64,000 nt of DNA from Auanema rhodensis. Its lineage: Eukaryota; Animalia; Nematoda. The stretch lies in contig OZ059894.1 in assembly GCA_964057225.1 (NCBI GenBank), positions 10,974,001-11,038,000 of the forward strand, given 5' to 3'. Below are positions 16,769 to 58,163 of the stretch, piece after piece (within the stretch, counting starts at the first letter, position 1; each line of letters opens with the position of its first letter). A program made the position numbers and the translations under genes. The notes under the pieces are model-generated. The model ran no database searches, was not told the DNA's origin, and saw nothing but the letters and a program-made list of their open reading frames with translations.

Positions 16769-16804
16769 GAACACATATTGAAGATTAATTCGATAAGAAC
16801 AATT
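16769..16804 (-). pseudogene. Degenerate U2 fragment (nt 39-74), present in every unit
   Basis: 33/36 identity to 17232-17267. Confidence 0.85.
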
Positions 16805-17120
16805 TATTGACGTAGAGAATGTTTGTTCCGAAAAACTACAATATTAAACTATAAAAGTAACAAAAGCGTAGAGGCAGCAAAGACATGAATAAACATAAAT
16901 GTAAATACAGAATTACCAGGTAGTACATAAGTATGACAAAAAATTATAAGAAAGCCATGAAAATAGAAGGTTTGTGAACAAATGAGAGGTACATCTTTGA
17001 TCGTATAGTCATTTCTAAACCGTTCGTATGCTGCAGCATCGTCATAAGCGTCACTCAAGTTGAATTTCCATGTGTACTACACGATTTTCATTCTTATTGT
17101 TACATTCTTTCCCTGAGGGA

Positions 17121-17305
17121 ATGGGCCGTTCCCGCCAGCAGTGCAAGAGCGGGTCGACCCGTGAGGTGGAGCTAGCAAGCCAGCATCTACCTCAAGTCTC
17201 AAAAATCGGTTAACCTTATTGTGAACCAATGGAACACATATCGAAGGTTAATTCGATAAGAACGATTACTACACTTTGATCTTAGCCAAAAGGCCGAGAA
17301 GCGAT
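17121..17305 (-). ncRNA. U2: U2 snRNA
   Basis: ATCGCTTCTCGGCCTTTTGGCTAAGATCAAAGTGTAGTA 5' end; stem IIa; Sm site ATTTTTG (17200-17206); stem IV loop TTGCAC; 3' end approximate. Confidence 0.96.
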
Positions 17306-20877: not shown

Positions 20878-22058
20878 ACAGTAAAAAGTCCAATCAAGAG
20901 AGAAATTTTTTCAACACATAGTTGTTTTTTTTTTAAATATCATTGTTTTTCCTCATAACTCGGTTTAAACTCGTTCTAACCCGTTGAAATACGTCTAGAA
21001 AGTCTTTATAACATGCATATGTATGATAGAACTTCATATTTATTGTAATAGAAAATTTTATTTTCAGACGTCTTGGTTAACAATGATATGTTTTACCCCG
21101 TTATAATTTTTATCATAATGTTCCTTATACGGAACGCTCAATGAAACTTGCTTCCAGAAAAATTTCTTTCTATTTTTTCTTCATATGTACGTAGATACTA
21201 TAGAGAACTATGATAGAAAACTTTAACATTCACGAAATCATCATTTCTCATTACGCTACGGAGGTTTAAAAAGCTGTGTTTTACCTTATAATAGACCGGA
21301 AAACCCTTGTGTTAAAACTGGACCGTTTTTACACATATAAAAATGTCCCGTATTCGGGACCCTAATGTAACTTTTGATTCCCTATATTTTTTTTCATGAA
21401 ATTTACAATCTACTGTAGAAAGAAGAATTATTTTTATAAAAACTGTAAATTTTTGAAAAATGAAAACAAAACGAAAACAAAAACAACTTTTTTTTGAACA
21501 TTTTCTCACACAAGGGTCCCCCCTTACCTACTTTTTTTCTCATTACTCGTTTCAACCTCATCCGATCACTCTGCAAACATGTTTAATCGTTCTAACTTGT
21601 TGAAATACGTCTTAAAAGTCTAAACAACATGCATATGCATAATAGAAACCACCCGAATAGGCCCCCACGCACTAAACGAGATATATACATTACCAGTATA
21701 GTAATAGAACACATATTGAAGATTAATTCGATAAGAACAATTTATTGACGTAGAGAATGTTTGTTCCGAAAAACTACAATATTAAACTATAAAAGTAACA
21801 AAAGCGTAGAGGCAGCAAAGACATGAATAAACATAAATGTAAATACAGAATTACCAGGTAGTACATAAGTATGACAAAAAATTATAAGAAAGCCATGAAA
21901 ATAGAAGGTTTGTGAACAAATGAGAGGTACATCTTTGATCGTATAGTCATTTCTAAACCGTTCGTATGCTGCAGCATCGTCATAAGCGTCACTCAAGTTG
22001 AATTTCCATGTGTACTACACGATTTTCATTCTTATTGTTACATTCTTTCCCTGAGGGA

Positions 22059-22243
22059 ATGGGCCGTTCCCGCCAGCAGTGCAAGAGCGGGTCGACCCGT
22101 GAGGTGGAGCTAGCAAGCCAGCATCTACCTCAAGTCTCAAAAATCGGTTAACCTTATTGTGAACCAATGGAACACATATCGAAGGTTAATTCGATAAGAA
22201 CGATTACTACACTTTGATCTTAGCCAAAAGGCCGAGAAGCGAT
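22059..22243 (-). ncRNA. U2: U2 snRNA
   Basis: Array copy. Confidence 0.95.
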
Positions 22244-23344: not shown

Positions 23345-24525
23345 ACAGTAAAAAGTCCAATCAAGAGAGAAATTTTTTCAACACATAGTTGTTTTTTTTT
23401 TAAATATCATTGTTTTTCCTCATAACTCGGTTTAAACTCGTTCTAACCCGTTGAAATACGTCTAGAAAGTCTTTATAACATGCATATGTATGATAGAACT
23501 TCATATTTATTGTAATAGAAAATTTTATTTTCAGACGTCTTGGTTAACAATGATATGTTTTACCCCGTTATAATTTTTATCATAATGTTCCTTATACGGA
23601 ACGCTCAATGAAACTTGCTTCCAGAAAAATTTCTTTCTATTTTTTCTTCATATGTACGTAGATACTATAGAGAACTATGATAGAAAACTTTAACATTCAC
23701 GAAATCATCATTTCTCATTACGCTACGGAGGTTTAAAAAGCTGTGTTTTACCTTATAATAGACCGGAAAACCCTTGTGTTAAAACTGGACCGTTTTTACA
23801 CATATAAAAATGTCCCGTATTCGGGACCCTAATGTAACTTTTGATTCCCTATATTTTTTTTCATGAAATTTACAATCTACTGTAGAAAGAAGAATTATTT
23901 TTATAAAAACTGTAAATTTTTGAAAAATGAAAACAAAACGAAAACAAAAACAACTTTTTTTTGAACATTTTCTCACACAAGGGTCCCCCCTTACCTACTT
24001 TTTTTCTCATTACTCGTTTCAACCTCATCCGATCACTCTGCAAACATGTTTAATCGTTCTAACTTGTTGAAATACGTCTTAAAAGTCTAAACAACATGCA
24101 TATGCATAATAGAAACCACCCGAATAGGCCCCCACGCACTAAACGAGATATATACATTACCAGTATAGTAATAGAACACATATTGAAGATTAATTCGATA
24201 AGAACAATTTATTGACGTAGAGAATGTTTGTTCCGAAAAACTACAATATTAAACTATAAAAGTAACAAAAGCGTAGAGGCAGCAAAGACATGAATAAACA
24301 TAAATGTAAATACAGAATTACCAGGTAGTACATAAGTATGACAAAAAATTATAAGAAAGCCATGAAAATAGAAGGTTTGTGAACAAATGAGAGGTACATC
24401 TTTGATCGTATAGTCATTTCTAAACCGTTCGTATGCTGCAGCATCGTCATAAGCGTCACTCAAGTTGAATTTCCATGTGTACTACACGATTTTCATTCTT
24501 ATTGTTACATTCTTTCCCTGAGGGA

Positions 24526-24710
24526 ATGGGCCGTTCCCGCCAGCAGTGCAAGAGCGGGTCGACCCGTGAGGTGGAGCTAGCAAGCCAGCATCTACCTCAA
24601 GTCTCAAAAATCGGTTAACCTTATTGTGAACCAATGGAACACATATCGAAGGTTAATTCGATAAGAACGATTACTACACTTTGATCTTAGCCAAAAGGCC
24701 GAGAAGCGAT
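24526..24710 (-). ncRNA. U2: U2 snRNA
   Basis: Array copy. Confidence 0.95.
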
Positions 24711-25773: not shown

Positions 25774-25817
<44 letters not shown>

Positions 25818-27146: not shown

Positions 27147-29781
27147 ATGGTTTATTGAATAACTAATGTTATGATACAATAACTAACCAATAAGAAAGAG
27201 CCCAGAACCGGGGAGACGGTCTTACCAGTACAACTTCAAACAGCAAGTGATTAAAAAGTACATAATAAGACAGATTACCAACAGGGGCTAAAACAACTCA
27301 AGAGTCGGGGGAGTGGGTTAAAAAAGTAATGAATAACAAAAAAAAAAAAATGAATACTAAAGCAGAACAATGAAAATTAAATATCAAGTACCGCTATGAT
27401 CAGACAATTTGAGTGCCTACGGCAATGGTGTTAAAAATAAACAACAAAATACATGTACCAATGAAGGTCAGAAAGAAAGAAAAAAAGACAAAAATAAGTA
27501 ATACAAAAAGTAAATACATTACAATCGAATCACAAACAAGTCAATGGATAATTTCTTCTTCATACTGGCTTACACCAGAAACATGTTCCACGTAGATATT
27601 CCTGGCCCACTTGATGGTATCGGCGACGACGAGCTTCTCCATTAGCCGGTTGTAGTGGCTGCTGATCTTGAGTGATCGAAGGGCTTGTCCGTTGAGCGGG
27701 TCCATAGTTCCAAGCATTCCTACGACATACGCTTCTACACTAGTCTTATAACCAAGACATTGGTATTGGCTGGCTATGTCAGCATATTTCCTCTCCTTTA
27801 TCATACGCGCGGCTATCATGGCTTGTCGGCGGTTTTCATAGCTCACTGTAACATCAACGATACTATAGTGTTTTGCGTCATGATTGACCACTACTATGTC
27901 AGGTCGGAGTGTACTATTAATGCCAGGAAGAGGCTGGTTAGTGTAAACTTCTCCGTTTTTAGGCTCTGGCAGTGCTTTGATAAGACGGTCCACGATGTTG
28001 TTGTGGCGGAGTTGGATTGCTCTCGTGTGAGAGTGGCAGTGTCCAAGAACATGTGCAGCAGTTTCGTTGGAGTAACTACACCTGCGGCACTGTTTGTTTC
28101 CTTCTCCGTGTCTTCTACAGCCATTGAGCTGGAGAGTATTGAGTCGAGCCTTGTGGATGAATCGCCAATCAGCAAACCGTATGAAATCTCCCTTCGCCAT
28201 AAAGTGATTGGACGCTTTGTTGAGCATTGTGACATCAAAGACTTTCCCTTGATCCGGTTTTTGAAGAAGGATCCGAAGGTCTTTCAGCCATAATGCACGT
28301 CGCAGGCTTCTGTGGCATAGTGAAGGTGTTAACAGTTGGTTGTTTAGATTGAGTTCTAAACCACTTTCGAGGCATGTCCAGTTAGCGTTGATGAGTTTCT
28401 TGAGTTGACGCATTGCTACTCTTACTCTAGTCCAGATGGAGGAAACATCAGATGTTTCGGTGTCGAAAATGCCATCAACGGAACCGTTGTAATATGCAGC
28501 TGTCTCATCGTTACTGGCTTGACGTTTAATCCTTTTTGATGCTACTTTTTTTGAGTCTTGATGCGCAATATCAGCTACTACAAGATCAGATGACTTCAAA
28601 AGTTGGTAGGCATGAGTGACTTCACAGACGTCTGACAGGTGTTGGAGTCGAGAGAGACCAAGTCCGCCGTAGTTAGTTGGCAGGTAGATTGGTTCAGCAC
28701 TGGCGTTTGGAGGATAGTGCATCCATCTACGGGCACAACGTTTGAGTTCTTTGTCAAAGGCGACTAGTTTACTCTTTGGGACGTGGCCATTCGTCATATG
28801 AAAATTAAGGCAGGGCATCAGGAAGGTGCGTACTGCGTCAGCTTTCTGCCATTCAGCAAGTAAGGATTTGTCAATTTTTTCCAAGTGTTGACTCATAATA
28901 TTCACTGTTGGAACCGCAGACTTATGTAAATGCATTCCAGTAGGGATTCCCAGGTGGGAGTAGCTGTCAAATTTGCTAAGAGCGGGTAGAGAGCAGCTCT
29001 GAAGCATGTATGAAGCTGTTGATATTTTCCCTTTGTCGATCGTCAAAGTGGCGCATTTCGCTGGTTTGAAGGTTAAGCCTGTGAAATTAGCCGCATTTGA
29101 TGCTGCGTCCAACATTTTCTGTAGATCTTCTGATGATGAGGAGACCAGGGCAAGGTCATCGGCGTACGCTAGCACAGCGATGTTGTGGTTGTGTAGCTTA
29201 TAGCCTGTAGAAGTTTCCAAGATGGTTTTAATTAGAGGTTCAATGGCAAGGTTGAACAGGATTGGAGATAGTGGGGATCCTTGTAACACACCTGCGTGAA
29301 CTGGGATGGTCGAAGTGAGTCCGGATCCTGTCTGGATTCTTGTAGAGGCATCTGTGTATAGAGCTCGTACTCGGGATATTGAGGCTTCAGCCATTCCTGA
29401 CCATCTTAGAACGTCTAGCAGAGTTTCGTGTGGCAGCGATCCAAAAGCGTTTGCGAGATCAAGCCAAGCAATTGCAATTTTCTCACGTTTACGTTTAGCG
29501 TCTGCAATGGTACTTTGCAACAAAAAGTTGTGTTCCATGCATCCAGCTTTGGCCACAAAGCCCTTTTGGGAGGGAGAAAGTCTTTTTTCTGCTCTTGCCC
29601 ATGTTAGCAGTCGATGCGTAAGACAAGCTGAGTACGTCTTACCAATTGTGCACGAAAGTGCTATTGGTCGCCAGTTGTTAATGTCAGCTTTATCACCTTT
29701 CTTATGGATGAGGACGGTGGTCGACTCTTTCCAGGAAAAAGGGATGTGTCCTAGCTTGTGTACGGTGTTAAAAATCGCAAA
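27147..29781 (-). mobile_element. 5'-truncated U2-targeting RLE non-LTR retrotransposon (Utopia/NeSL-like), copy 1
   Basis: RT + CCHC + PD-(D/E)xK ORF, ~395-nt 3' UTR ending AATAAACCAT at the U2 junction; 5' end truncated inside RT; left boundary ambiguous by 2 nt, right boundary approximate. Confidence 0.92.
27541..29781 (-). CDS. N-terminally truncated reverse transcriptase / restriction-like endonuclease
   Basis: Frame stays open upstream of 29556 (AIFN..IPFSWKESTTVLIHKKGD..NWRPIAL); WLDLANAFGS, GVLQGSPLSPILFN, YADD, CRRC...H....C, RHN, RPD..D..KERKY. Confidence 0.92.
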   Translation of the reverse strand, partial: FAIFNTVHKLGHIPFSWKESTTVLIHKKGDKADINNWRPIALSCTIGKTYSACLTHRLLTWARAEKRLSPSQKGFVAKAGCMEHNFLLQSTIADAKRKREKIAIAWLDLANAFGSLPHETLLDVLRWSGMAEASISRVRALYTDASTRIQTGSGLTSTIPVHAGVLQGSPLSPILFNLAIEPLIKTILETSTGYKLHNHNIAVLAYADDLALVSSSSEDLQKMLDAASNAANFTGLTFKPAKCATLTIDKGKISTASYMLQSCSLPALSKFDSYSHLGIPTGMHLHKSAVPTVNIMSQHLEKIDKSLLAEWQKADAVRTFLMPCLNFHMTNGHVPKSKLVAFDKELKRCARRWMHYPPNASAEPIYLPTNYGGLGLSRLQHLSDVCEVTHAYQLLKSSDLVVADIAHQDSKKVASKRIKRQASNDETAAYYNGSVDGIFDTETSDVSSIWTRVRVAMRQLKKLINANWTCLESGLELNLNNQLLTPSLCHRSLRRALWLKDLRILLQKPDQGKVFDVTMLNKASNHFMAKGDFIRFADWRFIHKARLNTLQLNGCRRHGEGNKQCRRCSYSNETAAHVLGHCHSHTRAIQLRHNNIVDRLIKALPEPKNGEVYTNQPLPGINSTLRPDIVVVNHDAKHYSIVDVTVSYENRRQAMIAARMIKERKYADIASQYQCLGYKTSVEAYVVGMLGTMDPLNGQALRSLKISSHYNRLMEKLVVADTIKWARNIYVEHVSGVSQYEEEIIH

Positions 29782-30944
29782 TAAAAATTAAAAAAAAAAA
29801 TTTAAAAATAAAAATTTTTTAAATATCATTGTTTTTCCTCATAACTCGGTTTAAACTCGTTCTAACCCGTTGAAATACGTCTAGAAAGTCTTTATAACAT
29901 GCATATGTATGATAGAACTTCATATTTATTGTAATAGAAAATTTTATTTTCAGACGTCTTGGTTAACAATGATATGTTTTACCCCCTTATAATTTTTATC
30001 ATAATGTTCCTTATACGGAACGCTCAATGAAACTTGCTTCCAGAAAAATTTCTTTCTATTTTTTCTTCATATGTACGTAGATACTATAGAGAACTATGAT
30101 AGAAAACTTTAACATTCACGAAATCATCATTTCTCATTACGCTACGGAGGTTTAAAAAGCTGTGTTTTACCTTATAATAGACCGGAAAACCCTTGTGTTA
30201 AAACTGGACCGTTTTTACACATATAAAAATGTCCCGTATTCGGGACCCTAATGTAACTTTTGATTCCCTATATTTTTTTTCATGAAATTTACAATCTACT
30301 GTAGAAAGAAGAATTATTTTTATAAAAACTGTAAATTTTTGAAAAATGAAAACAAAACGAAAACAAAAACAACTTTTTTTTGAACATTTTCTCACACAAG
30401 GGTCCTCCCTTACCTACTTTTTTTCTCATTACTCGTTTCAACCTCATCCGATCACTCTGCAAACATGTTTAATCGTTCTAACTTGTTGAAATACGTCTTA
30501 AAAGTCTAAACAACATGCATATGCATAATAGAAACCACCCGAATAGGCCCCCACGCACTAAACGAGATATATACATTACCAGTATAGTAATAGAACACAT
30601 ATTGAAGATTAATTCCATAAGAACAATTTATTGACGTAGAGAATGTTTGTTCCGAAAAACTACAATATTAAACTATAAAAGTAACAAAAGCGTAGAGGCA
30701 GCAAAGACATGAATAAACATAAATGTAAATACAGAATTACCAGGTAGTACATAAGTATGACAAAAAATTATAAGAAAGCCATGACAATAGAAGGTTTGTG
30801 AACAAATGAGAGGTACATCTTTGATCGTATAGTCATTTCTAAACCGTTCGTATGCTGCAGCATCGTCATAAGCGTCATTCAAGTTGAATTTCCATGTGTA
30901 CTACACGATTTTCATTCTTATTGTTACATTCTTTCCCTGAGGGA

Positions 30945-31129
30945 ATGGGCCGTTCCCGCCAGCAGTGCAAGAGCGGGTCGACCCGTGAGGTGGAGCTAGC
31001 AAGCCAGCATCTACCTCAAGTCTCAAAAATCGGTTAACCTTATTGTGAACCAATGGAACACATATCGAAGGTTAATTCGATAAGAACGATTACTACACTT
31101 TGATCTTAGCCAAAAGGCCGAGAAGCGAT
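30945..31129 (-). ncRNA. U2: U2 snRNA
   Basis: Array copy. Confidence 0.95.
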
Positions 31130-32192: not shown

Positions 32193-32228
<36 letters not shown>

Positions 32229-33409
32229 ACAGTAAAAAGTCCAATCAAGAGAGAAATTTTTTCAACACATAGTTGTTTTTTTTTTAAATATCATTGTTTT
32301 TCCTCATAACTCGGTTTAAACTCGTTCTAACCCGTTGAAATACGTCTAGAAAGTCTTTATAACATGCATATGTATGATAGAACTTCATATTTATTGTAAT
32401 AGAAAATTTTATTTTCAGACGTCTTGGTTAACAATGATATGTTTTACCCCGTTATAATTTTTATCATAATGTTCCTTATACGGAACGCTCAATGAAACTT
32501 GCTTCCAGAAAAATTTCTTTCTATTTTTTCTTCATATGTACGTAGATACTATAGAGAACTATGATAGAAAACTTTAACATTCACGAAATCATCATTTCTC
32601 ATTACGCTACGGAGGTTTAAAAAGCTGTGTTTTACCTTATAATAGACCGGAAAACCCTTGTGTTAAAACTGGACCGTTTTTACACATATAAAAATGTCCC
32701 GTATTCGGGACCCTAATGTAACTTTTGATTCCCTATATTTTTTTTCATGAAATTTACAATCTACTGTAGAAAGAAGAATTATTTTTATAAAAACTGTAAA
32801 TTTTTGAAAAATGAAAACAAAACGAAAACAAAAACAACTTTTTTTTGAACATTTTCTCACACAAGGGTCCCCCCTTACCTACTTTTTTTCTCATTACTCG
32901 TTTCAACCTCATCCGATCACTCTGCAAACATGTTTAATCGTTCTAACTTGTTGAAATACGTCTTAAAAGTCTAAACAACATGCATATGCATAATAGAAAC
33001 CACCCGAATAGGCCCCCACGCACTAAACGAGATATATACATTACCAGTATAGTAATAGAACACATATTGAAGATTAATTCGATAAGAACAATTTATTGAC
33101 GTAGAGAATGTTTGTTCCGAAAAACTACAATATTAAACTATAAAAGTAACAAAAGCGTAGAGGCAGCAAAGACATGAATAAACATAAATGTAAATACAGA
33201 ATTACCAGGTAGTACATAAGTATGACAAAAAATTATAAGAAAGCCATGAAAATAGAAGGTTTGTGAACAAATGAGAGGTACATCTTTGATCGTATAGTCA
33301 TTTCTAAACCGTTCGTATGCTGCAGCATCGTCATAAGCGTCACTCAAGTTGAATTTCCATGTGTACTACACGATTTTCATTCTTATTGTTACATTCTTTC
33401 CCTGAGGGA

Positions 33410-33594
33410 ATGGGCCGTTCCCGCCAGCAGTGCAAGAGCGGGTCGACCCGTGAGGTGGAGCTAGCAAGCCAGCATCTACCTCAAGTCTCAAAAATCGGTT
33501 AACCTTATTGTGAACCAATGGAACACATATCGAAGGTTAATTCGATAAGAACGATTACTACACTTTGATCTTAGCCAAAAGGCCGAGAAGCGAT
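33410..33594 (-). ncRNA. U2: U2 snRNA
   Basis: Array copy. Confidence 0.95.
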
Positions 33595-34515: not shown

Positions 34516-35854
34516 AATGTCATATTCTTCATTATCAGTTATATCACTCTAAATCTTGTTGTTAATAGATACGACCACAAAGAAAACAACAGGAACAGTA
34601 ACAATAACAAAAAAAATTTTTTTTTCACCTATGTGTCTAAAGGTTAGCCATGTATCCGTTTATATATATATCAACAGTAAAAAGTCCAATCAAGAGAGAA
34701 ATTTTTTCAACACATAGTTGTTTTTTTTTTAAATATCATTGTTTTTCCTCATAACTCGGTTTAAACTCGTTCTAACCCGTTGAAATACGTCTAGAAAGTC
34801 TTTATAACATGCATATGTATGATAGAACTTCATATTTATTGTAATAGAAAATTTTATTTTCAGACGTCTTGGTTAACAATGATATGTTTTACCCCCTTAT
34901 AATTTTTATCATAATGTTCCTTATACGGAACGCTCAATGAAACTTGCTTCCAGAAAAATTTCTTTCTATTTTTTCTTCATATGTACGTAGATACTATAGA
35001 GAACTATGATAGAAAACTTTAACATTCACGAAATCATCATTTCTCATTACGCTACGGAGGTTTAAAAAGCTGTGTTTTACCTTATAATAGACCGGAAAAC
35101 CCTTGTGTTAAAACTGGACCGTTTTTACACATATAAAAATGTCCCGTATTCGGGACCCTAATGTAACTTTTGATTCCCTATATTTTTTTTCATGAAATTT
35201 ACAATCTACTGTAGAAAGAAGAATTATTTTTATAAAAACTGTAAATTTTTGAAAAATGAAAACAAAACGAAAACAAAAACAACTTTTTTTTGAACATTTT
35301 CTCACACAAGGGTCCCCCCTTACCTACTTTTTTTCTCATTACTCGTTTCAACCTCATCCGATCACTCTGCAAACATGTTTAATCGTTCTAACTTGTTGAA
35401 ATACGTCTTAAAAGTCTGAACAACATGCATATGCATAATAGAAACCACCCGAATAGGCCCCCACGCACTAAACGAGATATATACATTACCAGTATAGTAA
35501 TAGAACACATATTGAAGATTAATTCGATAAGAACAATTTATTGACGTAGAGAATGTTTGTTCCGAAAAACTACAATATTAAACTATAAAAGTAACAAAAG
35601 CGTAGAGGCAGCAAAGACATGAATAAACATAAATGTAAATACAGAATTACCAGGTAGTACATAAGTATGACAAAAAATTATAAGAAAGCCATGAAAATAG
35701 AAGGTTTGTGAACAAATGAGAGGTACATCTTTGATCGTATAGTCATTTCTAAACCGTTCGTATGCTGCAGCATCGTCATAAGCGTCACTCAAGTTGAATT
35801 TCCATGTGTACTACACGATTTTCATTCTTATTGTTACATTCTTTCCCTGAGGGA

Positions 35855-36002
35855 ATGGGCCGTTCCCGCCAGCAGTGCAAGAGCGGGTCGACCCGTGAGG
35901 TGGAGCTAGCAAGCCAGCATCTACCTCAAGTCTCAAAAATCGGTTAACCTTATTGTGAACCAATGGAACACATATCGAAGGTTAATTCGATAAGAACGAT
36001 TA
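35855..36002 (-). pseudogene. U2: U2 snRNA 3' part left by retrotransposon insertion
   Basis: Same junction as 27146. Confidence 0.93.
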
Positions 36003-38638
36003 ATGGTTTATTGAATAACTAATGTTATGATACAATAACTAACCAATAAGAAAGAGCCCAGAACCGGGGAGACGGTCTTACCAGTACAACTTCAAACAGC
36101 AAGTGATTAAAAAGTACATAATAAGACAGATTACCAACAGGGGCTAAAACAACTCAAGAGTCGGGGGAGTGGGTTAAAAAAGTAATGAATAACAAAAAAA
36201 AAAAAAATGAATACTAAAGCAGAACAATGAAAATTAAATATCAAGTACCGCTATGATCAGACAATTTGAGTGCCTACGGCAATGGTGTTAAAAATAAACA
36301 ACAAAATACATGTACCAATGAAGGTCAGAAAGAAAGAAAAAAAGACAAAAATAAGTAATACAAAAAGTAAATACATTACAATCGAATCACAAACAAGTCA
36401 ATGGATAATTTCTTCTTCATACTGGCTTACACCAGAAACATGTTCCACGTAGATATTCCTGGCCCACTTGATGGTATCGGCGACGACGAGCTTCTCCATT
36501 AGCCGGTTGTAGTGGCTGCTGATCTTGAGTGATCGAAGGGCTTGTCCGTTGAGCGGGTCCATAGTTCCAAGCATTCCTACGACATACGCTTCTACACTAG
36601 TCTTATAACCAAGACATTGGTATTGGCTGGCTATGTCAGCATATTTCCTCTCCTTTATCATACGCGCGGCTATCATGGCTTGTCGGCGGTTTTCATAGCT
36701 CACTGTAACATCAACGATACTATAGTGTTTTGCGTCATGATTGACCACTACTATGTCAGGTCGGAGTGTACTATTAATGCCAGGAAGAGGCTGGTTAGTG
36801 TAAACTTCTCCGTTTTTAGGCTCTGGCAGTGCTTTGATAAGACGGTCCACGATGTTGTTGTGGCGGAGTTGGATTGCTCTCGTGTGAGAGTGGCAGTGTC
36901 CAAGAACATGTGCAGCAGTTTCGTTGGAGTAACTACACCTGCGGCACTGTTTGTTTCCTTCTCCGTGTCTTCTACAGCCATTGAGCTGGAGAGTATTGAG
37001 TCGAGCCTTGTGGATGAATCGCCAATCAGCAAACCGTATGAAATCTCCCTTCGCCATAAAGTGATTGGACGCTTTGTTGAGCATTGTGACATCAAAGACT
37101 TTCCCTTGATCCGGTTTTTGAAGAAGGATCCGAAGGTCTTTCAGCCATAATGCACGTCGCAGGCTTCTGTGGCATAGTGAAGGTGTTAACAGTTGGTTGT
37201 TTAGATTGAGTTCTAAACCACTTTCGAGGCATGTCCAGTTAGCGTTGATGAGTTTCTTGAGTTGACGCATTGCTACTCTTACTCTAGTCCAGATGGAGGA
37301 AACATCAGATGTTTCGGTGTCGAAAATGCCATCAACGGAACCGTTGTAATATGCAGCTGTCTCATCGTTACTGGCTTGACGTTTAATCCTTTTTGATGCT
37401 ACTTTTTTTGAGTCTTGATGCGCAATATCAGCTACTACAAGATCAGATGACTTCAAAAGTTGGTAGGCATGAGTGACTTCACAGACGTCTGACAGGTGTT
37501 GGAGTCGAGAGAGACCAAGTCCGCCGTAGTTAGTTGGCAGGTAGATTGGTTCAGCACTGGCGTTTGGAGGATAGTGCATCCATCTACGGGCACAACGTTT
37601 GAGTTCTTTGTCAAAGGCGACTAGTTTACTCTTTGGGACGTGGCCATTCGTCATATGAAAATTAAGGCAGGGCATCAGGAAGGTGCGTACTGCGTCAGCT
37701 TTCTGCCATTCAGCAAGTAAGGATTTGTCAATTTTTTCCAAGTGTTGACTCATAATATTCACTGTTGGAACCGCAGACTTATGTAAATGCATTCCAGTAG
37801 GGATTCCCAGGTGGGAGTAGCTGTCAAATTTGCTAAGAGCGGGTAGAGAGCAGCTCTGAAGCATGTATGAAGCTGTTGATATTTTCCCTTTGTCGATCGT
37901 CAAAGTGGCGCATTTCGCTGGTTTGAAGGTTAAGCCTGTGAAATTAGCCGCATTTGATGCTGCGTCCAACATTTTCTGTAGATCTTCTGATGATGAGGAG
38001 ACCAGGGCAAGGTCATCGGCGTACGCTAGCACAGCGATGTTGTGGTTGTGTAGCTTATAGCCTGTAGAAGTTTCCAAGATGGTTTTAATTAGAGGTTCAA
38101 TGGCAAGGTTGAACAGGATTGGAGATAGTGGGGATCCTTGTAACACACCTGCGTGAACTGGGATGGTCGAAGTGAGTCCGGATCCTGTCTGGATTCTTGT
38201 AGAGGCATCTGTGTATAGAGCTCGTACTCGGGATATTGAGGCTTCAGCCATTCCTGACCATCTTAGAACGTCTAGCAGAGTTTCGTGTGGCAGCGATCCA
38301 AAAGCGTTTGCGAGATCAAGCCAAGCAATTGCAATTTTCTCACGTTTACGTTTAGCGTCTGCAATGGTACTTTGCAACAAAAAGTTGTGTTCCATGCATC
38401 CAGCTTTGGCCACAAAGCCCTTTTGGGAGGGAGAAAGTCTTTTTTCTGCTCTTGCCCATGTTAGCAGTCGATGCGTAAGACAAGCTGAGTACGTCTTACC
38501 AATTGTGCACGAAAGTGCTATTGGTCGCCAGTTGTTAATGTCAGCTTTATCACCTTTCTTATGGATGAGGACGGTGGTCGACTCTTTCCAGGAAAAAGGG
38601 ATGTGTCCTAGCTTGTGTACGGTGTTAAAAATCGCAAA
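36003..38638 (-). mobile_element. 5'-truncated Utopia/NeSL-like element, copy 2 (duplicate of copy 1)
   Basis: Same protein, same 5' truncation and A/T filler as copy 1. Confidence 0.92.
36398..38638 (-). CDS. N-terminally truncated RT / RLE protein
   Basis: Translation identical to copy 1. Confidence 0.92.
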   Translation of the reverse strand, partial: FAIFNTVHKLGHIPFSWKESTTVLIHKKGDKADINNWRPIALSCTIGKTYSACLTHRLLTWARAEKRLSPSQKGFVAKAGCMEHNFLLQSTIADAKRKREKIAIAWLDLANAFGSLPHETLLDVLRWSGMAEASISRVRALYTDASTRIQTGSGLTSTIPVHAGVLQGSPLSPILFNLAIEPLIKTILETSTGYKLHNHNIAVLAYADDLALVSSSSEDLQKMLDAASNAANFTGLTFKPAKCATLTIDKGKISTASYMLQSCSLPALSKFDSYSHLGIPTGMHLHKSAVPTVNIMSQHLEKIDKSLLAEWQKADAVRTFLMPCLNFHMTNGHVPKSKLVAFDKELKRCARRWMHYPPNASAEPIYLPTNYGGLGLSRLQHLSDVCEVTHAYQLLKSSDLVVADIAHQDSKKVASKRIKRQASNDETAAYYNGSVDGIFDTETSDVSSIWTRVRVAMRQLKKLINANWTCLESGLELNLNNQLLTPSLCHRSLRRALWLKDLRILLQKPDQGKVFDVTMLNKASNHFMAKGDFIRFADWRFIHKARLNTLQLNGCRRHGEGNKQCRRCSYSNETAAHVLGHCHSHTRAIQLRHNNIVDRLIKALPEPKNGEVYTNQPLPGINSTLRPDIVVVNHDAKHYSIVDVTVSYENRRQAMIAARMIKERKYADIASQYQCLGYKTSVEAYVVGMLGTMDPLNGQALRSLKISSHYNRLMEKLVVADTIKWARNIYVEHVSGVSQYEEEIIH

Positions 38639-39801
38639 TAAAAATTAAAAAAAAAAATTTAAAAATAAAAATTTTTTAAATATCATTGTTTTTCCTCATA
38701 ACTCGGTTTAAACTCGTTCTAACCCGTTGAAATACGTCTAGAAAGTCTTTATAACATGCATATGTATGATAGAACTTCATATTTATTGTAATAGAAAATT
38801 TTATTTTCAGACGTCTTGGTTAACAATGATATGTTTTACCCCCTTATAATTTTTATCATAATGTTCCTTATACGGAACGCTCAATGAAACTTGCTTCCAG
38901 AAAAATTTCTTTCTATTTTTTCTTCATATGTACGTAGATACTATAGAGAACTATGATAGAAAACTTTAACATTCACGAAATCATCATTTCTCATTACGCT
39001 ACGGAGGTTTAAAAAGCTGTGTTTTACCTTATAATAGACCGGAAAACCCTTGTGTTAAAACTGGACCGTTTTTACACATATAAAAATGTCCCGTATTCGG
39101 GACCCTAATGTAACTTTTGATTCCCTATATTTTTTTTCATGAAATTTACAATCTACTGTAGAAAGAAGAATTATTTTTATAAAAACTGTAAATTTTTGAA
39201 AAATGAAAACAAAACGAAAACAAAAACAACTTTTTTTTGAACATTTTCTCACACAAGGGTCCCCCCTTACCTACTTTTTTTCTCATTACTCGTTTCAACC
39301 TCATCCGATCACTCTGCAAACATGTTTAATCGTTCTAACTTGTTGAAATACGTCTTAAAAGTCTAAACAACATGCATATGCATAATAGAAACCACCCGAA
39401 TAGGCCCCCACGCACTAAACGAGATATATACATTACCAGTATAGTAATAGAACACATATTGAAGATTAATTCGATAAGAACAATTTATTGACGTAGAGAA
39501 TGTTTGTTCCGAAAAACTACAATATTAAACTATAAAAGTAACAAAAGCGTAGAGGCAGCAAAGACATGAATAAACATAAATGTAAATACAGAATTACCAG
39601 GTAGTACATAAGTATGACAAAAAATTATAAGAAAGCCATGAAAATAGAAGGTTTGTGAACAAATGAGAGGTACATCTTTGATCGTATAGTCATTTCTAAA
39701 CCGTTCGTATGCTGCAGCATCGTCATAAGCGTCACTCAAGTTGAATTTCCATGTGTACTACACGATTTTCATTCTTATTGTTACATTCTTTCCCTGAGGG
39801 A

Positions 39802-39986
39802 ATGGGCCGTTCCCGCCAGCAGTGCAAGAGCGGGTCGACCCGTGAGGTGGAGCTAGCAAGCCAGCATCTACCTCAAGTCTCAAAAATCGGTTAACCTTAT
39901 TGTGAACCAATGGAACACATATCGAAGGTTAATTCGATAAGAACGATTACTACACTTTGATCTTAGCCAAAAGGCCGAGAAGCGAT
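39802..39986 (-). ncRNA. U2: U2 snRNA
   Basis: Array copy. Confidence 0.95.
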
Positions 39987-41091: not shown

Positions 41092-42272
41092 ACAGTAAAA
41101 AGTCCAATCAAGAGAGAAATTTTTTCAACACATAGTTGTTTTTTTTTTAAATATCATTGTTTTTCCTCATAACTCGGTTTAAACTCGTTCTAACCCGTTG
41201 AAATACGTCTAGAAAGTCTTTATAACATGCATATGTATGATAGAACTTCATATTTATTGTAATAGAAAATTTTATTTTCAGACGTCTTGGTTAACAATGA
41301 TATGTTTTACCCCCTTATAATTTTTATCATAATGTTCCTTATACGGAACGCTCAATGAAACTTGCTTCCAGAAAAATTTCTTTCTATTTTTTCTTCATAT
41401 GTACGTAGATACTATAGAGAACTATGATAGAAAACTTTAACATTCACGAAATCATCATTTCTCATTACGCTACGGAGGTTTAAAAAGCTGTGTTTTACCT
41501 TATAATAGACCGGAAAACCCTTGTGTTAAAACTGGACCGTTTTTACACATATAAAAATGTCCCGTATTCGGGACCCTAATGTAACTTTTGATTCCCTATA
41601 TTTTTTTTCATGAAATTTACAATCTACTGTAGAAAGAAGAATTATTTTTATAAAAACTGTAAATTTTTGAAAAATGAAAACAAAACGAAAACAAAAACAA
41701 CTTTTTTTTGAACATTTTCTCACACAAGGGTCCCCCCTTACCTACTTTTTTTCTCATTACTCGTTTCAACCTCATCCGATCACTCTGCAAACATGTTTAA
41801 TCGTTCTAACTTGTTGAAATACGTCTTAAAAGTCTAAACAACATGCATATGCATAATAGAAACCACCCGAATAGGCCCCCACGCACTAAACGAGATATAT
41901 ACATTACCAGTATAGTAATAGAACACATATTGAAGATTAATTCGATAAGAACAATTTATTGACGTAGAGAATGTTTGTTCCGAAAAACTACAATATTAAA
42001 CTATAAAAGTAACAAAAGCGTAGAGGCAGCAAAGACATGAATAAACATAAATGTAAATACAGAATTACCAGGTAGTACATAAGTATGACAAAAAATTATA
42101 AGAAAGCCATGAAAATAGAAGGTTTGTGAACAAATGAGAGGTACATCTTTGATCGTATAGTCATTTCTAAACCGTTCGTATGCTGCAGCATCGTCATAAG
42201 CGTCACTCAAGTTGAATTTCCATGTGTACTACACGATTTTCATTCTTATTGTTACATTCTTTCCCTGAGGGA

Positions 42273-42457
42273 ATGGGCCGTTCCCGCCAGCAGTGCAAGA
42301 GCGGGTCGACCCGTGAGGTGGAGCTAGCAAGCCAGCATCTACCTCAAGTCTCAAAAATCGGTTAACCTTATTGTGAACCAATGGAACACATATCGAAGGT
42401 TAATTCGATAAGAACGATTACTACACTTTGATCTTAGCCAAAAGGCCGAGAAGCGAT
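42273..42457 (-). ncRNA. U2: U2 snRNA
   Basis: Array copy. Confidence 0.95.
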
Positions 42458-43556: not shown

Positions 43557-44737
43557 ACAGTAAAAAGTCCAATCAAGAGAGAAATTTTTTCAACACATAG
43601 TTGTTTTTTTTTTAAATATCATTGTTTTTCCTCATAACTCGGTTTAAACTCGTTCTAACCCGTTGAAATACGTCTAGAAAGTCTTTATAACATGCATATG
43701 TATGATAGAACTTCATATTTATTGTAATAGAAAATTTTATTTTCAGACGTCTTGGTTAACAATGATATGTTTTACCCCCTTATAATTTTTATCATAATGT
43801 TCCTTATACGGAACGCTCAATGAAACTTGCTTCCAGAAAAATTTCTTTCTATTTTTTCTTCATATGTACGTAGATACTATAGAGAACTATGATAGAAAAC
43901 TTTAACATTCACGAAATCATCATTTCTCATTACGCTACGGAGGTTTAAAAAGCTGTGTTTTACCTTATAATAGACCGGAAAACCCTTGTGTTAAAACTGG
44001 ACCGTTTTTACACATATAAAAATGTCCCGTATTCGGGACCCTAATGTAACTTTTGATTCCCTATATTTTTTTTCATGAAATTTACAATCTACTGTAGAAA
44101 GAAGAATTATTTTTATAAAAACTGTAAATTTTTGAAAAATGAAAACAAAACGAAAACAAAAACAACTTTTTTTTGAACATTTTCTCACACAAGGGTCCCC
44201 CCTTACCTACTTTTTTTCTCATTACTCGTTTCAACCTCATCCGATCACTCTGCAAACATGTTTAATCGTTCTAACTTGTTGAAATACGTCTTAAAAGTCT
44301 AAACAACATGCATATGCATAATAGAAACCACCCGAATAGGCCCCCACGCACTAAACGAGATATATACATTACCAGTATAGTAATAGAACACATATTGAAG
44401 ATTAATTCGATAAGAACAATTTATTGACGTAGAGAATGTTTGTTCCGAAAAACTACAATATTAAACTATAAAAGTAACAAAAGCGTAGAGGCAGCAAAGA
44501 CATGAATAAACATAAATGTAAATACAGAATTACCAGGTAGTACATAAGTATGACAAAAAATTATAAGAAAGCCATGAAAATAGAAGGTTTGTGAACAAAT
44601 GAGAGGTACATCTTTGATCGTATAGTCATTTCTAAACCGTTCGTATGCTGCAGCATCGTCATAAGCGTCACTCAAGTTGAATTTCCATGTGTACTACACG
44701 ATTTTCATTCTTATTGTTACATTCTTTCCCTGAGGGA

Positions 44738-44922
44738 ATGGGCCGTTCCCGCCAGCAGTGCAAGAGCGGGTCGACCCGTGAGGTGGAGCTAGCAAGCCAG
44801 CATCTACCTCAAGTCTCAAAAATCGGTTAACCTTATTGTGAACCAATGGAACACATATCGAAGGTTAATTCGATAAGAACGATTACTACACTTTGATCTT
44901 AGCCAAAAGGCCGAGAAGCGAT
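44738..44922 (-). ncRNA. U2: U2 snRNA
   Basis: Array copy. Confidence 0.95.
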
Positions 44923-45843: not shown

Positions 45844-47196
45844 AATGTCATATTCTTCATTATCAGTTATATCACTCTAAATCTTGTTGTTAATAGATAC
45901 GACCACAAAGAAAACAACAGGAACAGTAACAATAACAAAAAAAATTTTTTTTTCACCTATGTGTCTAAAGGTTAGCCATGTATCCGTTTATATATATATA
46001 TATATATATATATCAACAGTAAAAAGTCCAATCAAGAGAGAAATTTTTTCAACACATAGTTGTTTTTTTTTTAAATATCATTGTTTTTCCTCATAACTCG
46101 GTTTAAACTCGTTCTAACCCGTTGAAATACGTCTAGAAAGTCTTTATAACATGCATATGTATGATAGAACTTCATATTTATTGTAATAGAAAATTTTATT
46201 TTCAGACGTCTTGGTTAACAATGATATGTTTTACCCCCTTATAATTTTTATCATAATGTTCCTTATACGGAACGCTCAATGAAACTTGCTTCCAGAAAAA
46301 TTTCTTTCTATTTTTTCTTCATATGTACGTAGATACTATAGAGAACTATGATAGAAAACTTTAACATTCACGAAATCATCATTTCTCATTACGCTACGGA
46401 GGTTTAAAAAGCTGTGTTTTACCTTATAATAGACCGGAAAACCCTTGTGTTAAAACTGGACCGTTTTTACACATATAAAAATGTCCCGTATTCGGGACCC
46501 TAATGTAACTTTTGATTCCCTATATTTTTTTTCATGAAATTTACAATCTACTGTAGAAAGAAGAATTATTTTTATAAAAACTGTAAATTTTTGAAAAATG
46601 AAAACAAAACGAAAACAAAAGCAACTTTTTTTTGAACATTTTCTCACACAAGGGTCCCCCCTTACCTACTTTTTTTCTCATTACTCGTTTCAACCTCATC
46701 CGATCACTCTGCAAACATGTTTAATCGTTCTAACTTGTTGAAATACGTCTTAAAAGTCTAAACAACATGCATATGCATAATAGAAACCACCCGAATAGGC
46801 CCCCACGCACTAAACGAGATATATACATTACCAGTATAGTAATAGAACACATATTGAAGATTAATTCCATAAGAACAATTTATTGACGTAGAGAATGTTT
46901 GTTCCGAAAAACTACAATATTAAACTATAAAAGTAACAAAAGCGTAGAGGCAGCAAAGACATGAATAAACATAAATGTAAATACAGAATTACCAGGTAGT
47001 ACATAAGTATGACAAAAAATTATAAGAAAGCCATGAAAATAGAAGGTTTGTGAACAAATGAGAGGTACATCTTTGATCGTATAGTCATTTCTAAACCGTT
47101 CGTATGCTGCAGCATCGTCATAAGCGTCACTCAAGTTGAATTTCCATGTGTACTACACGATTTTCATTCTTATTGTTACATTCTTTCCCTGAGGGA

Positions 47197-47381
47197 ATGG
47201 GCCGTTCCCGCCAGCAGTGCAAGAGCGGGTCGACCCGTGAGGTGGAGCTAGCAAGCCAGCATCTACCTCAAGTCTCAAAAATCGGTTAACCTTATTGTGA
47301 ACCAATGGAACACATATCGAAGGTTAATTCGATAAGAACGATTACTACACTTTGATCTTAGCCAAAAGGCCGAGAAGCGAT
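47197..47381 (-). ncRNA. U2: U2 snRNA
   Basis: Array copy. Confidence 0.95.
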
Positions 47382-48302: not shown

Positions 48303-49647
48303 AATGTCATATTCTTCATTATCAGTTATATCACTCTAAATCTTGTTGTTAATAGATACGACCACAAAGAAAACAACAGGAACAGTAACAATAACAAAAA
48401 AAATTTTTTTTTCACCTATGTGTCTAAAGGTTAGCCATGTATCCGTTTATATATATATATATATCAACAGTAAAAAGTCCAATCAAGAGAGAAATTTTTT
48501 CAACACATAGTTGTTTTTTTTTTAAATATCATTGTTTTTCCTCATAACTCGGTTTAAACTCGTTCTAACCCGTTGAAATACGTCTAGAAAGTCTTTATAA
48601 CATGCATATGTATGATAGAACTTCATATTTATTGTAATAGAAAATTTTATTTTCAGACGTCTTGGTTAACAATGATATGTTTTACCCCCTTATAATTTTT
48701 ATCATAATGTTCCTTATACGGAACGCTCAATGAAACTTGCTTCCAGAAAAATTTCTTTCTATTTTTTCTTCATATGTACGTAGATACTATAGAGAACTAT
48801 GATAGAAAACTTTAACATTCACGAAATCATCATTTCTCATTACGCTACGGAGGTTTAAAAAGCTGTGTTTTACCTTATAATAGACCGGAAAACCCTTGTG
48901 TTAAAACTGGACCGTTTTTACACATATAAAAATGTCCCGTATTCGGGACCCTAATGTAACTTTTGATTCCCTATATTTTTTTTCATGAAATTTACAATCT
49001 ACTGTAGAAAGAAGAATTATTTTTATAAAAACTGTAAATTTTTGAAAAATGAAAACAAAACGAAAACAAAAACAACTTTTTTTTGAACATTTTCTCACAC
49101 AAGGGTCCTCCCTTACCTACTTTTTTTCTCATTACTCGTTTCAACCTCATCCGATCACTCTGCAAACATGTTTAATCGTTCTAACTTGTTGAAATACGTC
49201 TTAAAAGTCTAAACAACATGCATATGCATAATAGAAACCACCCGAATAGGCCCCCACGCACTAAACGAGATATATACATTACCAGTATAGTAATAGAACA
49301 CATATTGAAGATTAATTCCATAAGAACAATTTATTGACGTAGAGAATGTTTGTTCCGAAAAACTACAATATTAAACTATAAAAGTAACAAAAGCGTAGAG
49401 GCAGCAAAGACATGAATAAACATAAATGTAAATACAGAATTACCAGGTAGTACATAAGTATGACAAAAAATTATAAGAAAGCCATGACAATAGAAGGTTT
49501 GTGAACAAATGAGAGGTACATCTTTGATCGTATAGTCATTTCTAAACCGTTCGTATGCTGCAGCATCGTCATAAGCGTCATTCAAGTTGAATTTCCATGT
49601 GTACTACACGATTTTCATTCTTATTGTTACATTCTTTCCCTGAGGGA

Positions 49648-49795
49648 ATGGGCCGTTCCCGCCAGCAGTGCAAGAGCGGGTCGACCCGTGAGGTGGAGCT
49701 AGCAAGCCAGCATCTACCTCAAGTCTCAAAAATCGGTTAACCTTATTGTGAACCAATGGAACACATATCGAAGGTTAATTCGATAAGAACGATTA
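49648..49795 (-). pseudogene. U2: U2 snRNA 3' part left by retrotransposon insertion
   Basis: Same junction as 27146. Confidence 0.93.
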
Positions 49796-50903
49796 ATGGT
49801 TTATTGAATAACTAATGTTATGAAACAATAAATAACCAATAAAAAAGAGCCCAGAATCGGGGAGACGGTATTACCAGTACAACTTAAAACAGCAAGTGAT
49901 TAAAAAGTACAAAATAAAACACATTACCAACAGAGGCTAAAACGACTCAAGAGTCGGGGGAGTGGGTTAAAAAAAGTAATGAATAACAAAAAAAATGAAT
50001 AATAAAGCAGAACAGTGAAAAGTAAATATCAAGTGCCGCTATGATCAAACAATTTGAGTGCCTACGGCAATGGTGTTAAAAATAAACAACAAAATACATG
50101 TACCAATGAAGGTCAGAAAGAGAGAAAGAAAAAAGACAAAAATAAGTAATACAAAAAGTAAAAAATATATTACAATCAAATCACAAACAAGTCAATGGAT
50201 AATTTCTTCTTCATACTGCCTTACACCAGAAACATGTTCCACGTAGATATTCCTGGCCCACTTGATGGTATCGGCGACGACGAGCTTCTCCATTAGCCGG
50301 TTGTAGTGGCTGCTGATCTTGAGTGATCGGAGGGCTTGTACGTTGAGCGGGTCCATAGTTCCAAGCATTCCTACGACATACGCTTCTACACTAGTCTTAT
50401 AACCAAGACATTGGTATTGGCTGGCTATGTCAGCATATTTCCTCTCCTTTATCATACGCGCGGCTATCATGGCTTGTCGGCGGTTTTCATAGCTCACTGT
50501 AACATCAACGATACTACAGTGTTTTGCGTCATGATCGACCACTACTATGTCAGGTCGGAGTGTACTATTAATGCCAGGAAGAGGCTGGTTAGTGTAAACT
50601 TCTCCGTTTTTAGGCTCTGGCAGGGCTTTGATAAGACGGTCCACGATGTTGTTGTGGCGGAGTTGGATTGCTCTCGTGTGAAAGTGGCAGTGTCCAAGAA
50701 CATGTGCAGCAGTTTCGTTGGGGTAACTACACCTGCGGCACTGTTTGTTTCCTTCTCCGTGTCTTCTACAGCCATTGAGCTGGAGAGTATTAAGTCGAGC
50801 CTTGTGGATGAATCGCCAATCAGCAAACCGTATGAAATCTCCCTTCGCCATAAAGTGATTGGACGCTTTGTTGAGCATTGTGACATCAAAGACTTTCCCT
50901 TGA
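49796..50903 (-). mobile_element. Heavily 5'-truncated Utopia/NeSL-like element, copy 3 (independent sequence variant)
   Basis: Only CCHC+RLE region and 3' UTR; many substitutions versus copies 1/2; different 5' junction. Confidence 0.92.
50192..50902 (-). pseudogene. C-terminal CCHC + RLE fragment of the retrotransposon ORF
   Basis: QGKVFDVTMLNK...CRRC..H..C, RPDIVV..D, KERKY. Confidence 0.9.
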
Positions 50904-50949
50904 TACTACACGATTTTCATTCTTATTGTTACATTCTTTCCCTGAGGGA

Positions 50950-51134
50950 ATGGGCCGTTCCCGCCAGCAGTGCAAGAGCGGGTCGACCCGTGAGGTGGAG
51001 CTAGCAAGCCAGCATCTACCTCAAGTCTCAAAAATCGGTTAACCTTATTGTGAACCAATGGAACACATATCGAAGGTTAATTCGATAAGAACGATTACTA
51101 CACTTTGATCTTAGCCAAAAGGCCGAGAAGCGAT
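50950..51134 (-). ncRNA. U2: U2 snRNA (intact, directly upstream of copy 3)
   Basis: Array copy. Confidence 0.95.
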
Positions 51135-53060: not shown

Positions 53061-53245
53061 ATGGGCCGTTCCCGCCAGCAGTGCAAGAGCGGGTCGACCC
53101 GTGAGGTGGAGCTAGCAAGCCAGCATCTACCTCAAGTCTCAAAAATCGGTTAACCTTATTGTGAACCAATGGAACACATATCGAAGGTTAATTCGATAAG
53201 AACGATTACTACACTTTGATCTTAGCCAAAAGGCCGAGAAGCGAT
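53061..53245 (-). ncRNA. U2: U2 snRNA
   Basis: Array copy. Confidence 0.95.
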
Positions 53246-55519: not shown

Positions 55520-55704
55520 ATGGGCCGTTCCCGCCAGCAGTGCAAGAGCGGGTCGACCCGTGAGGTGGAGCTAGCAAGCCAGCATCTACCTCAAGTCTCA
55601 AAAATCGGTTAACCTTATTGTGAACCAATGGAACACATATCGAAGGTTAATTCGATAAGAACGATTACTACACTTTGATCTTAGCCAAAAGGCCGAGAAG
55701 CGAT
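55520..55704 (-). ncRNA. U2: U2 snRNA
   Basis: Array copy. Confidence 0.95.
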
Positions 55705-57978: not shown

Positions 57979-58163
57979 ATGGGCCGTTCCCGCCAGCAGT
58001 GCAAGAGCGGGTCGACCCGTGAGGTGGAGCTAGCAAGCCAGCATCTACCTCAAGTCTCAAAAATCGGTTAACCTTATTGTGAACCAATGGAACACATATC
58101 GAAGGTTAATTCGATAAGAACGATTACTACACTTTGATCTTAGCCAAAAGGCCGAGAAGCGAT
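57979..58163 (-). ncRNA. U2: U2 snRNA
   Basis: Array copy. Confidence 0.95.

What the first reader, a model, noticed from the sequence alone, without database searches (positions are those of the whole stretch)
17255..17275. All U2 copies are altered in a near-invariant motif exactly at the transposon insertion site
Seen: every copy reads AAAGUGUAGUA-AUC-GUUCUUAUC. Known: human, yeast and C. elegans U2 read GUGUAGUA-UCU-GUUCUU; these bases belong to the branchpoint-interacting stem-loop and include pseudouridylation sites, and this is the Utopia target region. The rest of the RNA looks functional (stem IIa pairs, Sm site intact). Inference: either a host escape mutation that the element has tracked (arms race in a core spliceosomal RNA) or a specialised U2 variant with different branch-site behaviour.
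Basis: partly seen in the sequence, partly recalled or inferred. Interest (0 to 1): 0.82.

Follow-up and report, generated by a model that had tools for sequence, protein, structure and literature searches.

The report
Nematode U2 altered at retrotransposon site
Every U2 spliceosomal RNA gene in this nematode array reads AUC instead of the almost universal UCU, exactly where a U2-specific jumping gene inserts; a second nematode genus with the same kind of element is also altered there, so a link is plausible but unproven.

Summary
Positions 17-64 kb hold a tandem array with a unit of about 2.47 kb (one U2 gene plus two 5S genes). All 16 intact U2 genes read GUAGUA-AUC-GUUCUU. They are one homogenised sequence (15 identical, 1 SNP), not 16 independent cases. 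Three units carry 5'-truncated Utopia-type elements (RT, CCHC, RLE) joined to U2 from nt 38 onward. These represent two independent insertions and one duplicate.

The rest of the RNA scores as a full U2 (148 bits). A one-nucleotide register shift keeps the branchpoint-interacting stem-loop at the predicted stability of the normal ecdysozoan form.

UCU is canonical in C. elegans, in Trichinella and in the Utopia hosts whose junctions I read in Kojima & Jurka 2015. A JGI metagenome scan found no AUC form.

Mesorhabditis spiculigera also hosts Utopia. No U2 copy next to its elements has UCU. They read CA, UAA and other forms, and one old junction still reads UCU.

My best reading is that AUC-U2 is this lineage's working U2 and that the change arose at the element's nick site. 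An arms race is possible but untested.

The scan has noted the same AUC form at other loci of this genome.

The parts
17264..17266 (-). AUC triplet (U2 nt 40-42) replacing the canonical UCU (vertebrate nt 39-41)
17116..17305 (-). intact U2 snRNA gene, copy 1 (reference copy)
   Evidence: Rfam RF00004 148.4 bits
19589..19778 (-). intact U2 copy, identical to copy 1
22054..22243 (-). intact U2 copy, identical
24521..24710 (-). intact U2 copy, identical
30940..31129 (-). intact U2 copy, identical (upstream of insertion 1)
33405..33594 (-). intact U2 copy, identical
39797..39986 (-). intact U2 copy, identical
42268..42457 (-). intact U2 copy, identical
44733..44922 (-). intact U2 copy, identical
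47192..47381 (-). intact U2 copy, identical
50945..51134 (-). intact U2 copy, identical (upstream of insertion 3)
53056..53245 (-). intact U2 copy, identical
55515..55704 (-). intact U2 copy, identical
57974..58163 (-). intact U2 copy, identical
60425..60614 (-). intact U2 copy, identical
62890..63079 (-). intact U2 copy with one SNP (G147T), AUC kept
   Evidence: 143.1 bits
26994..27146 (-). head-less U2 (nt 38-190) downstream of insertion 1
27147..29814 (-). 5'-truncated Utopia-type element, insertion 1: RT, CCHC finger, PD..D RLE motif, 3' UTR ending ...AATAAACCAT(TA). ORF 27541-29556, 671 aa
   Evidence: Pfam RVT_1; homologues; boundaries; sequence
35850..36002 (-). head-less U2 downstream of insertion 2
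36003..38671 (-). insertion 2 (approximate ends), a segmental duplicate of insertion 1. The surrounding 7.8 kb is 99.82% identical
49643..49795 (-). head-less U2 downstream of insertion 3
49796..50893 (-). insertion 3: a shorter 5'-truncated copy, 96.8% identical to insertion 1 (independent event). Its 5' end abuts the spacer GTGTAGTA at about 50894-50904
16769..16810 (-). fossil junction present in every unit: ...AATAA(A) followed by a decayed U2 tail starting ATTGTTCTTATCG
   Evidence: 88-90% to U2 nt 38-78
17075..17082 (-). spacer GTGTAGTA, a possible fossil U2 head, repeated in every unit

Best explanation
The AUC form is the working, housekeeping U2 snRNA of this nematode lineage. It is carried in U2-5S tandem arrays and kept uniform by concerted evolution. 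[quoted passage not shown] The change is best read as one extra A after GUAGUA plus loss of one U. The upper BSL pairs (U-A, G.U, A.C) can re-form one nucleotide further 3'. That leaves all six GUAGUA bases in the loop and gives the same marginal stability as the normal ecdysozoan BSL. At least one conserved pseudouridine position is lost or moved. The change sits at the base where the Utopia endonuclease nicks and reverse transcription starts. I infer that it arose there, as a small repair or junction scar of that process, and then spread through the arrays. The element still uses the site. Its 3' junction is set by flanking conserved sequence, and probably by the U2 tail carried on read-through transcripts. 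Shown: the sequence state, the junctions, the uniformity of copies and the pairing arithmetic. Inferred: expression, sole-U2 status, scar origin and the element's mode of recognition.
For: All 16 intact copies are full-scoring U2 genes with AUC, and upstream regions are near-identical. The junctions lie at nt 38 in two independent insertions plus a fossil junction in every unit. BSL pairs are taken from PMC13019295. The shifted-register BSL evaluates at +3.9 kcal/mol against +4.0 for the ecdysozoan UCU form and +6.4 if the register is not shifted. UCU is canonical in C. elegans, in Trichinella and in the Utopia hosts whose junctions I read in PMC4640811 S1, parts 2-3. No AUC-type U2 was found among 241 million JGI metagenome records. 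In seven Utopia-adjacent loci of Mesorhabditis spiculigera, none of 12 head-plus-tail U2 copies has UCU. Two families with intact GUAGUA and compensatory stem IIb changes read CA and UAA. Junction bases after one element family's end vary (ACA, A, ATAA, ACT, AACA, AAA). One old junction still reads A-UCU-GUUCUU, so that lineage changed after Utopia arrived. Runs of coded organism A, and of B, C and D, hold 79-93% of the gene's sampled 31-mers. Probable RNA runs of A hold 64%. Earlier scan notes report AUC at other loci of this genome.
Against: There is no direct evidence of expression. There is no genome-wide census, so a canonical U2 elsewhere is not excluded. The state in organisms B-D is ambiguous, because losing 3 of 14 words fits either a UCU copy or an unrelated SNP. 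AUC does not resemble the element's own 3' end (...CCATTA), so it is not an obvious scar, and junctions in this window are uniform. The Mesorhabditis loci were chosen through Utopia proteins, so they over-sample damaged U2 copies. Free-energy values for an isolated 22-mer say little about a protein-bound, modified RNA. Only four nematode lineages were compared.
Confidence: 0.45

Rival explanations
1. Arms race. The AUC change was selected because it lowers cleavage or priming by Utopia. The element's DNA-binding and endonuclease module then adapted, so host and element are chasing each other inside a core spliceosomal RNA.
For: The change lies at the nick site in an otherwise near-invariant motif. 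A second Utopia-bearing genus has several different sequences at the same site while keeping BSL pairing through double changes. An old Mesorhabditis junction still reads UCU. The element inserts into the new target form.
Against: Trichinella and the arthropod, echinoderm and alligator Utopia hosts whose junctions I read keep UCU despite many insertions. There is no measure of cleavage preference. No full-length element lies in the window, so the DNA-binding fingers cannot be examined. Junction heterogeneity in Mesorhabditis supplies a purely mutational route to the same pattern.
Confidence: 0.15
2. Unlinked drift. Nematodes recognise branch sites loosely, so these three bases are weakly constrained. 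AUC is a neutral lineage-specific substitution spread by concerted evolution, and its position at the Utopia site is coincidence.
For: C. elegans lacks a strong branch-site consensus (established knowledge) and lacks the otherwise universal pseudouridine at the position equivalent to vertebrate 34 (PMC1276797). BSL stability is unchanged by the variant. All copies are one homogenised sequence.
Against: C. elegans and Trichinella keep UCU. The rest of the 5' 60 nt stays conserved in both variant genera, and the changes cluster at the nick site. The metagenome scan found only two hits, both looking like degenerate plant-type U2 fragments, with a non-U at this position.
Confidence: 0.25
3. Minor or specialised variant, or a silenced array. 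The AUC arrays are a variant class, or dead targets that soak up insertions, while a canonical U2 encoded elsewhere does most splicing.
For: Only 64 kb of the genome was readable here. Variant snRNA genes are known in animals (established knowledge).
Against: AUC is the amplified form, with 16 intact full-scoring copies and conserved upstream regions. Probable RNA runs hold most of the gene's words.
Confidence: 0.1

Closest known systems
Canonical U2 snRNA (Rfam RF00004; human, yeast, C. elegans)
   Same: It is full length. Stem-loop I, GUAGUA, stem IIa/IIb, the Sm site and stem-loops III/IV are all present. It has the extra A before GUGUAGUA that the fly and C. elegans sequences also show.
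   Different: It reads AUC where the consensus has upper-case UCU. One BSL pair (A29-U41) is lost and the upper stem shifts by one nucleotide. At most one U remains where C. elegans has two pseudouridines.
Utopia, the U2-gene-specific RLE non-LTR retrotransposons (Kojima & Jurka 2015, PMC4640811)
   Same: It has RT, a C-terminal CCHC finger and a PD..D endonuclease. It lies in the same orientation as U2. The downstream U2 starts at nt 38/39. The upstream U2 head is deleted, the copies are 5'-truncated, and the 3' end carries an AATAAAC...TA motif as in Utopia-1_DPo. The protein homologues come from listed Utopia hosts.
   Different: The target reads AUC rather than UCU. The nearest relatives are Diploscapter elements at only about 57% amino-acid identity. 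The host array links U2 to 5S genes.
R2 in 28S rDNA arrays
   Same: It is a site-specific RLE element living in a tandem array of an essential RNA gene. Intact units are maintained by array turnover.
   Different: I know of no report of a 28S target change at the R2 site (from memory, not searched here). In this case the target motif itself differs from the universal form.
Engineered human BSL mutants (PMC13019295)
   Same: Changes to BSL pairing near the loop alter how much branch-site complementarity is needed. The AUC form frees the last A of GUAGUA from the stem, much like loop-proximal destabilising mutants.
   Different: Those are laboratory mutants on the 5' strand of an orthogonal U2. 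This is a natural, fixed change on the 3' strand.

Membership tests
U2 spliceosomal snRNA (RF00004) | Covariance-model score above gathering, with a full-length match | tested here: met
   148.4 bits against 46, model positions 1-192, 16 copies
U2 spliceosomal snRNA (RF00004) | GUAGUA branch-point recognition sequence and an Sm site | tested here: met
   Both are present in the alignment
U2 spliceosomal snRNA (RF00004) | Conserved UCU after GUAGUA (3' strand of the BSL) | tested here: not met
   AUC in all copies. A shifted BSL is still possible
U2 spliceosomal snRNA (RF00004) | Expressed, Sm-bound and incorporated in spliceosomes | not testable with these tools
The only support is word shares in probable RNA runs
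Utopia non-LTR retrotransposons | Reverse transcriptase with a C-terminal CCHC finger and a PD..D/ExK restriction-like endonuclease | tested here: met
   RVT_1 hit. The CX2CX12HX4C and RPD-X13-D motifs were read from the translation of 27780-28090. Homologues cover 99% of the ORF
Utopia non-LTR retrotransposons | Insertion in U2 genes with the downstream U2 starting at about nt 39, in the same orientation | tested here: met
   Tails identical to nt 38-190 follow the element end in three copies
Utopia non-LTR retrotransposons | Phylogenetic placement of the RT inside the Utopia clade | tested here: inconclusive
   The best named hits are from published Utopia hosts (Dendroctonus, turtles) and from Centruroides. 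Nematode hits are Mesorhabditis and Diploscapter. No tree was built
Utopia non-LTR retrotransposons | N-terminal zinc fingers of a full-length element | not testable with these tools
   All three copies in the window are 5'-truncated
Host-parasite arms race at a target site | The variant target is cut less well by the ancestral enzyme, and the element carries matching changes | not testable with these tools
   This needs biochemical assays and full-length elements

The most novel reading that the evidence does not exclude
In rhabditid nematodes that carry Utopia, the three bases at the element's nick site in U2 are being repeatedly rewritten (AUC here; CA and UAA in Mesorhabditis). The BSL is preserved by register shifts or compensatory changes. 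This would be a conflict between a site-specific retrotransposon and a core spliceosomal RNA, with possible effects on branch-site selection and on U2 pseudouridylation.
Probability: 0.18. Interest if true: 0.85.

Novelty: new variant of a known kind. Interest (0 to 1): 0.6.

Why it matters
U2 nt 39-41 are treated as invariant from yeast to human. They belong to the stem-loop that gates branch-site recognition, and they carry conserved pseudouridines. A natural animal U2 with a different sequence there, apparently as the main gene form, offers three things. It is a ready-made experiment on how much the BSL sequence matters compared with its structure. It is a test case for co-evolution of modification guides. 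It may also be the first example of a site-specific retrotransposon leaving a mark on, or driving change in, the essential RNA it targets.

Tried and rejected
I worked from nt 34 onward or with local scripts only. Expression, minor UCU copies and the state in organisms B-D were therefore not tested.
2. The JGI metagenome scan for any non-U after GUAGUA gave two hits, both looking like degenerate plant-type U2 fragments, and no AUC. The number of canonical U2 genes in that collection could not be counted, so there is no denominator.
3. The IMG/VR scan with the 18-mer from nt 34 gave seven hits with no U2-like sequence after the 18-mer, which I take as chance matches. The Utopia protein found no relatives in IMG/VR.
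4. An exact look-up of the element's ORF found nothing on record.
5. The Diploscapter contigs L001 and L002 end before the U2 junction.
6. A literature search for the AUC motif found nothing in a U2 context.
7. Unconstrained RNA folding of the BSL region is uninformative, because the canonical form also folds at about 0 kcal/mol.
8. The fossil junction in each unit (AATAA-ATTG...) fits an AUC target with one C-to-T change, or a UCU target with one deletion. It does not date the change firmly.
9. The species could not be named. The retroelement hits point only to clade V nematodes.

Full report
**What is there.** Positions 17-64 kb of the window hold a tandem array. The unit is about 2465 bp and carries one U2 snRNA gene and two 5S rRNA genes, all on the minus strand. 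Rfam reports 16 full-length U2 genes at 143-148 bits against a gathering score of 46, and three partial ones at 87.7 bits. A motif scan finds GUGUAGUA-AUC-GUUCUUAUC in all 16 intact genes and no UCU form anywhere in the window. In the model alignment, the three AUC positions are the only mismatches to upper-case consensus in the 5' half, apart from one extra A before GUGUAGUA. Fly and C. elegans U2 also have that extra A, as printed in PMC4640811 S1. Fifteen copies are identical over 190 nt and one has a single change at nt 147. The 150 nt upstream differ by at most one base. 'All copies' therefore means one sequence spread by concerted evolution.

**The insertions.**
- The three partial U2 genes are identical to nt 38-190 and directly follow the 3' end of a non-LTR element.
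- The element has an RT domain (Pfam). The translation also shows a CX2CX12HX4C finger and an RPD-X13-D endonuclease motif.
- Its named homologues include published Utopia hosts (Dendroctonus, turtles), plus Centruroides, Mesorhabditis and Diploscapter.
- All three copies are 5'-truncated, and each is associated with deletion of the upstream U2 head, the promoter and the 5S genes.
- Insertions 1 and 2 lie in a 7.8 kb segment duplicated at 99.82% identity. Insertion 3 is 96.8% identical to insertion 1 and has a different 5' end. There are therefore two independent events.
- Every unit also carries a decayed junction plus U2 tail in its spacer.
- Kojima & Jurka state that U2 downstream of Utopia starts at nt 39 and that the head is often deleted.

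**How unusual AUC is.**
- The Utopia paper's supplement prints junctions for arthropod, echinoderm, alligator and Trichinella hosts, and all of them read (U)CUGUUCUU. The C. elegans reference line also reads UCU.
- C. elegans U2 carries pseudouridines at the equivalents of vertebrate positions 37, 39, 41, 43 and 44, and the region is called highly conserved (PMC1276797).
- A scan of JGI metagenome contigs for any U2 with a non-U after GUAGUA returned two hits. Both look like degenerate plant-type U2 fragments, and neither is AUC.
- No paper in the library holds the AUC motif in a U2 context.

**Structure.** The 2026 human BSL study gives these pairs: G25-C45, A26-U44, U27.U43, C28-G42, A29-U41, A30.C40, G31.U39 and U32-A38. 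UCU is thus the 3' strand of the upper stem. Read as an A inserted after GUAGUA plus one U lost, the AUC form can re-make U-A, G.U and A.C one nucleotide further 3', with all of GUAGUA in the loop. The evaluated energy is +3.9 kcal/mol. The ecdysozoan UCU form gives +4.0, and the AUC form gives +6.4 if the register is not shifted. These numbers only show that pairing potential is kept. The real BSL is protein-bound and modified. By analogy with loop-proximal mutants in that study, freeing the last A might lower the need for branch-site complementarity. That is inference.

**A second genus.** I fetched seven loci of Mesorhabditis spiculigera through its Utopia proteins.
- They hold 12 U2 copies with both head and tail, and none has UCU.
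- Two families keep an intact GUAGUA and differ by compensatory changes in stem IIb, which suggests both are under constraint. One reads CA (Rfam 126 bits). The other reads UAA.
- In both families the A.C mismatch of the canonical BSL becomes a U-A pair through changes on both strands.
- After the end of one element family, the few bases before GUUCUU vary among copies: ACA, A, ATAA, ACT, AACA and AAA.
- One old junction still reads A-UCU-GUUCUU.
- Mesorhabditis was therefore canonical when Utopia was already inserting. The site has since diversified, and the insertion process itself makes small differences at these bases.
- Caveat: these loci were picked through the element, so damaged copies are over-sampled.

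**What could not be done.** The look-up of sequencing runs showed that runs of coded organism A hold 86-93% of 14 sampled words of the gene. Expression, a possible canonical copy elsewhere and the triplet in B-D remain open. A loss of three words fits either a UCU copy or an unrelated SNP. Earlier notes of this scan report AUC at other loci of the same genome, up to 1.2 Mb away, and none of the notes my searches returned reports a canonical copy. These are unchecked leads.

**Reading.** The most likely reading is that AUC-U2 is this lineage's working U2. The change is structurally tolerated through a register shift. It probably arose at the Utopia nick site and was then spread by array homogenisation. 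Selection for escape is possible and would be the interesting case. It is weakened because Trichinella and the arthropod, echinoderm and alligator hosts keep UCU. Unlinked drift remains a serious rival, because only four nematode lineages could be compared. A minor-variant or dead-array reading is the least likely.

Noticed in passing
window 5828-13759 (+) and 9-2402 (+): A BEL/Pao-type LTR retroelement has a single 2643-aa ORF that runs from gag-like DUF1759 through Pao protease and integrase into a phlebovirus G2-like envelope. A second envelope-only ORF lies upstream. The nearest named relatives are strongylid nematode elements at 37-40% identity.
   Followed up: partly
window 50894-50904: The 5' end of insertion 3 abuts the GTGTAGTA that sits in the spacer of every unit. 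An intact U2 remains upstream, and about 2.2 kb is deleted (the rest of the spacer, both 5S genes, the U2 promoter and the U2 head).
   Followed up: partly
window 24521-33594 vs 33405-42457: An insertion-bearing block of about 7.8 kb is duplicated at 99.82% identity. The array therefore has a higher-order repeat that copies a disrupted unit along with intact ones.
   Followed up: yes
L003:5086-5274, L018:about 5970-6160, L006:about 6185: Mesorhabditis spiculigera has two U2 families that differ by compensatory changes in stem IIb and by the bases after GUAGUA (CA vs UAA). Both also have an unusual stem-loop I.
   Followed up: partly
L018:13159: One junction of an older Utopia subfamily in Mesorhabditis keeps the canonical A-UCU-GUUCUU, followed by a truncated tail. 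The same truncated tail follows a CA-type head at L008:8248.
   Followed up: no
window 15045-15163 (+) and 4198-4276 (-): A lone 5S gene in the opposite orientation sits at the edge of the array, and a partial 5S (51 bits) lies within the retroelement region.
   Followed up: no
window 30480-30500 and 29830-29890 (also in every unit): A stretch of about 65 nt (...gacgtatttcaac...gttagaacga...) occurs twice in the unit spacer at about 84% identity. Its origin is unknown.
   Followed up: no
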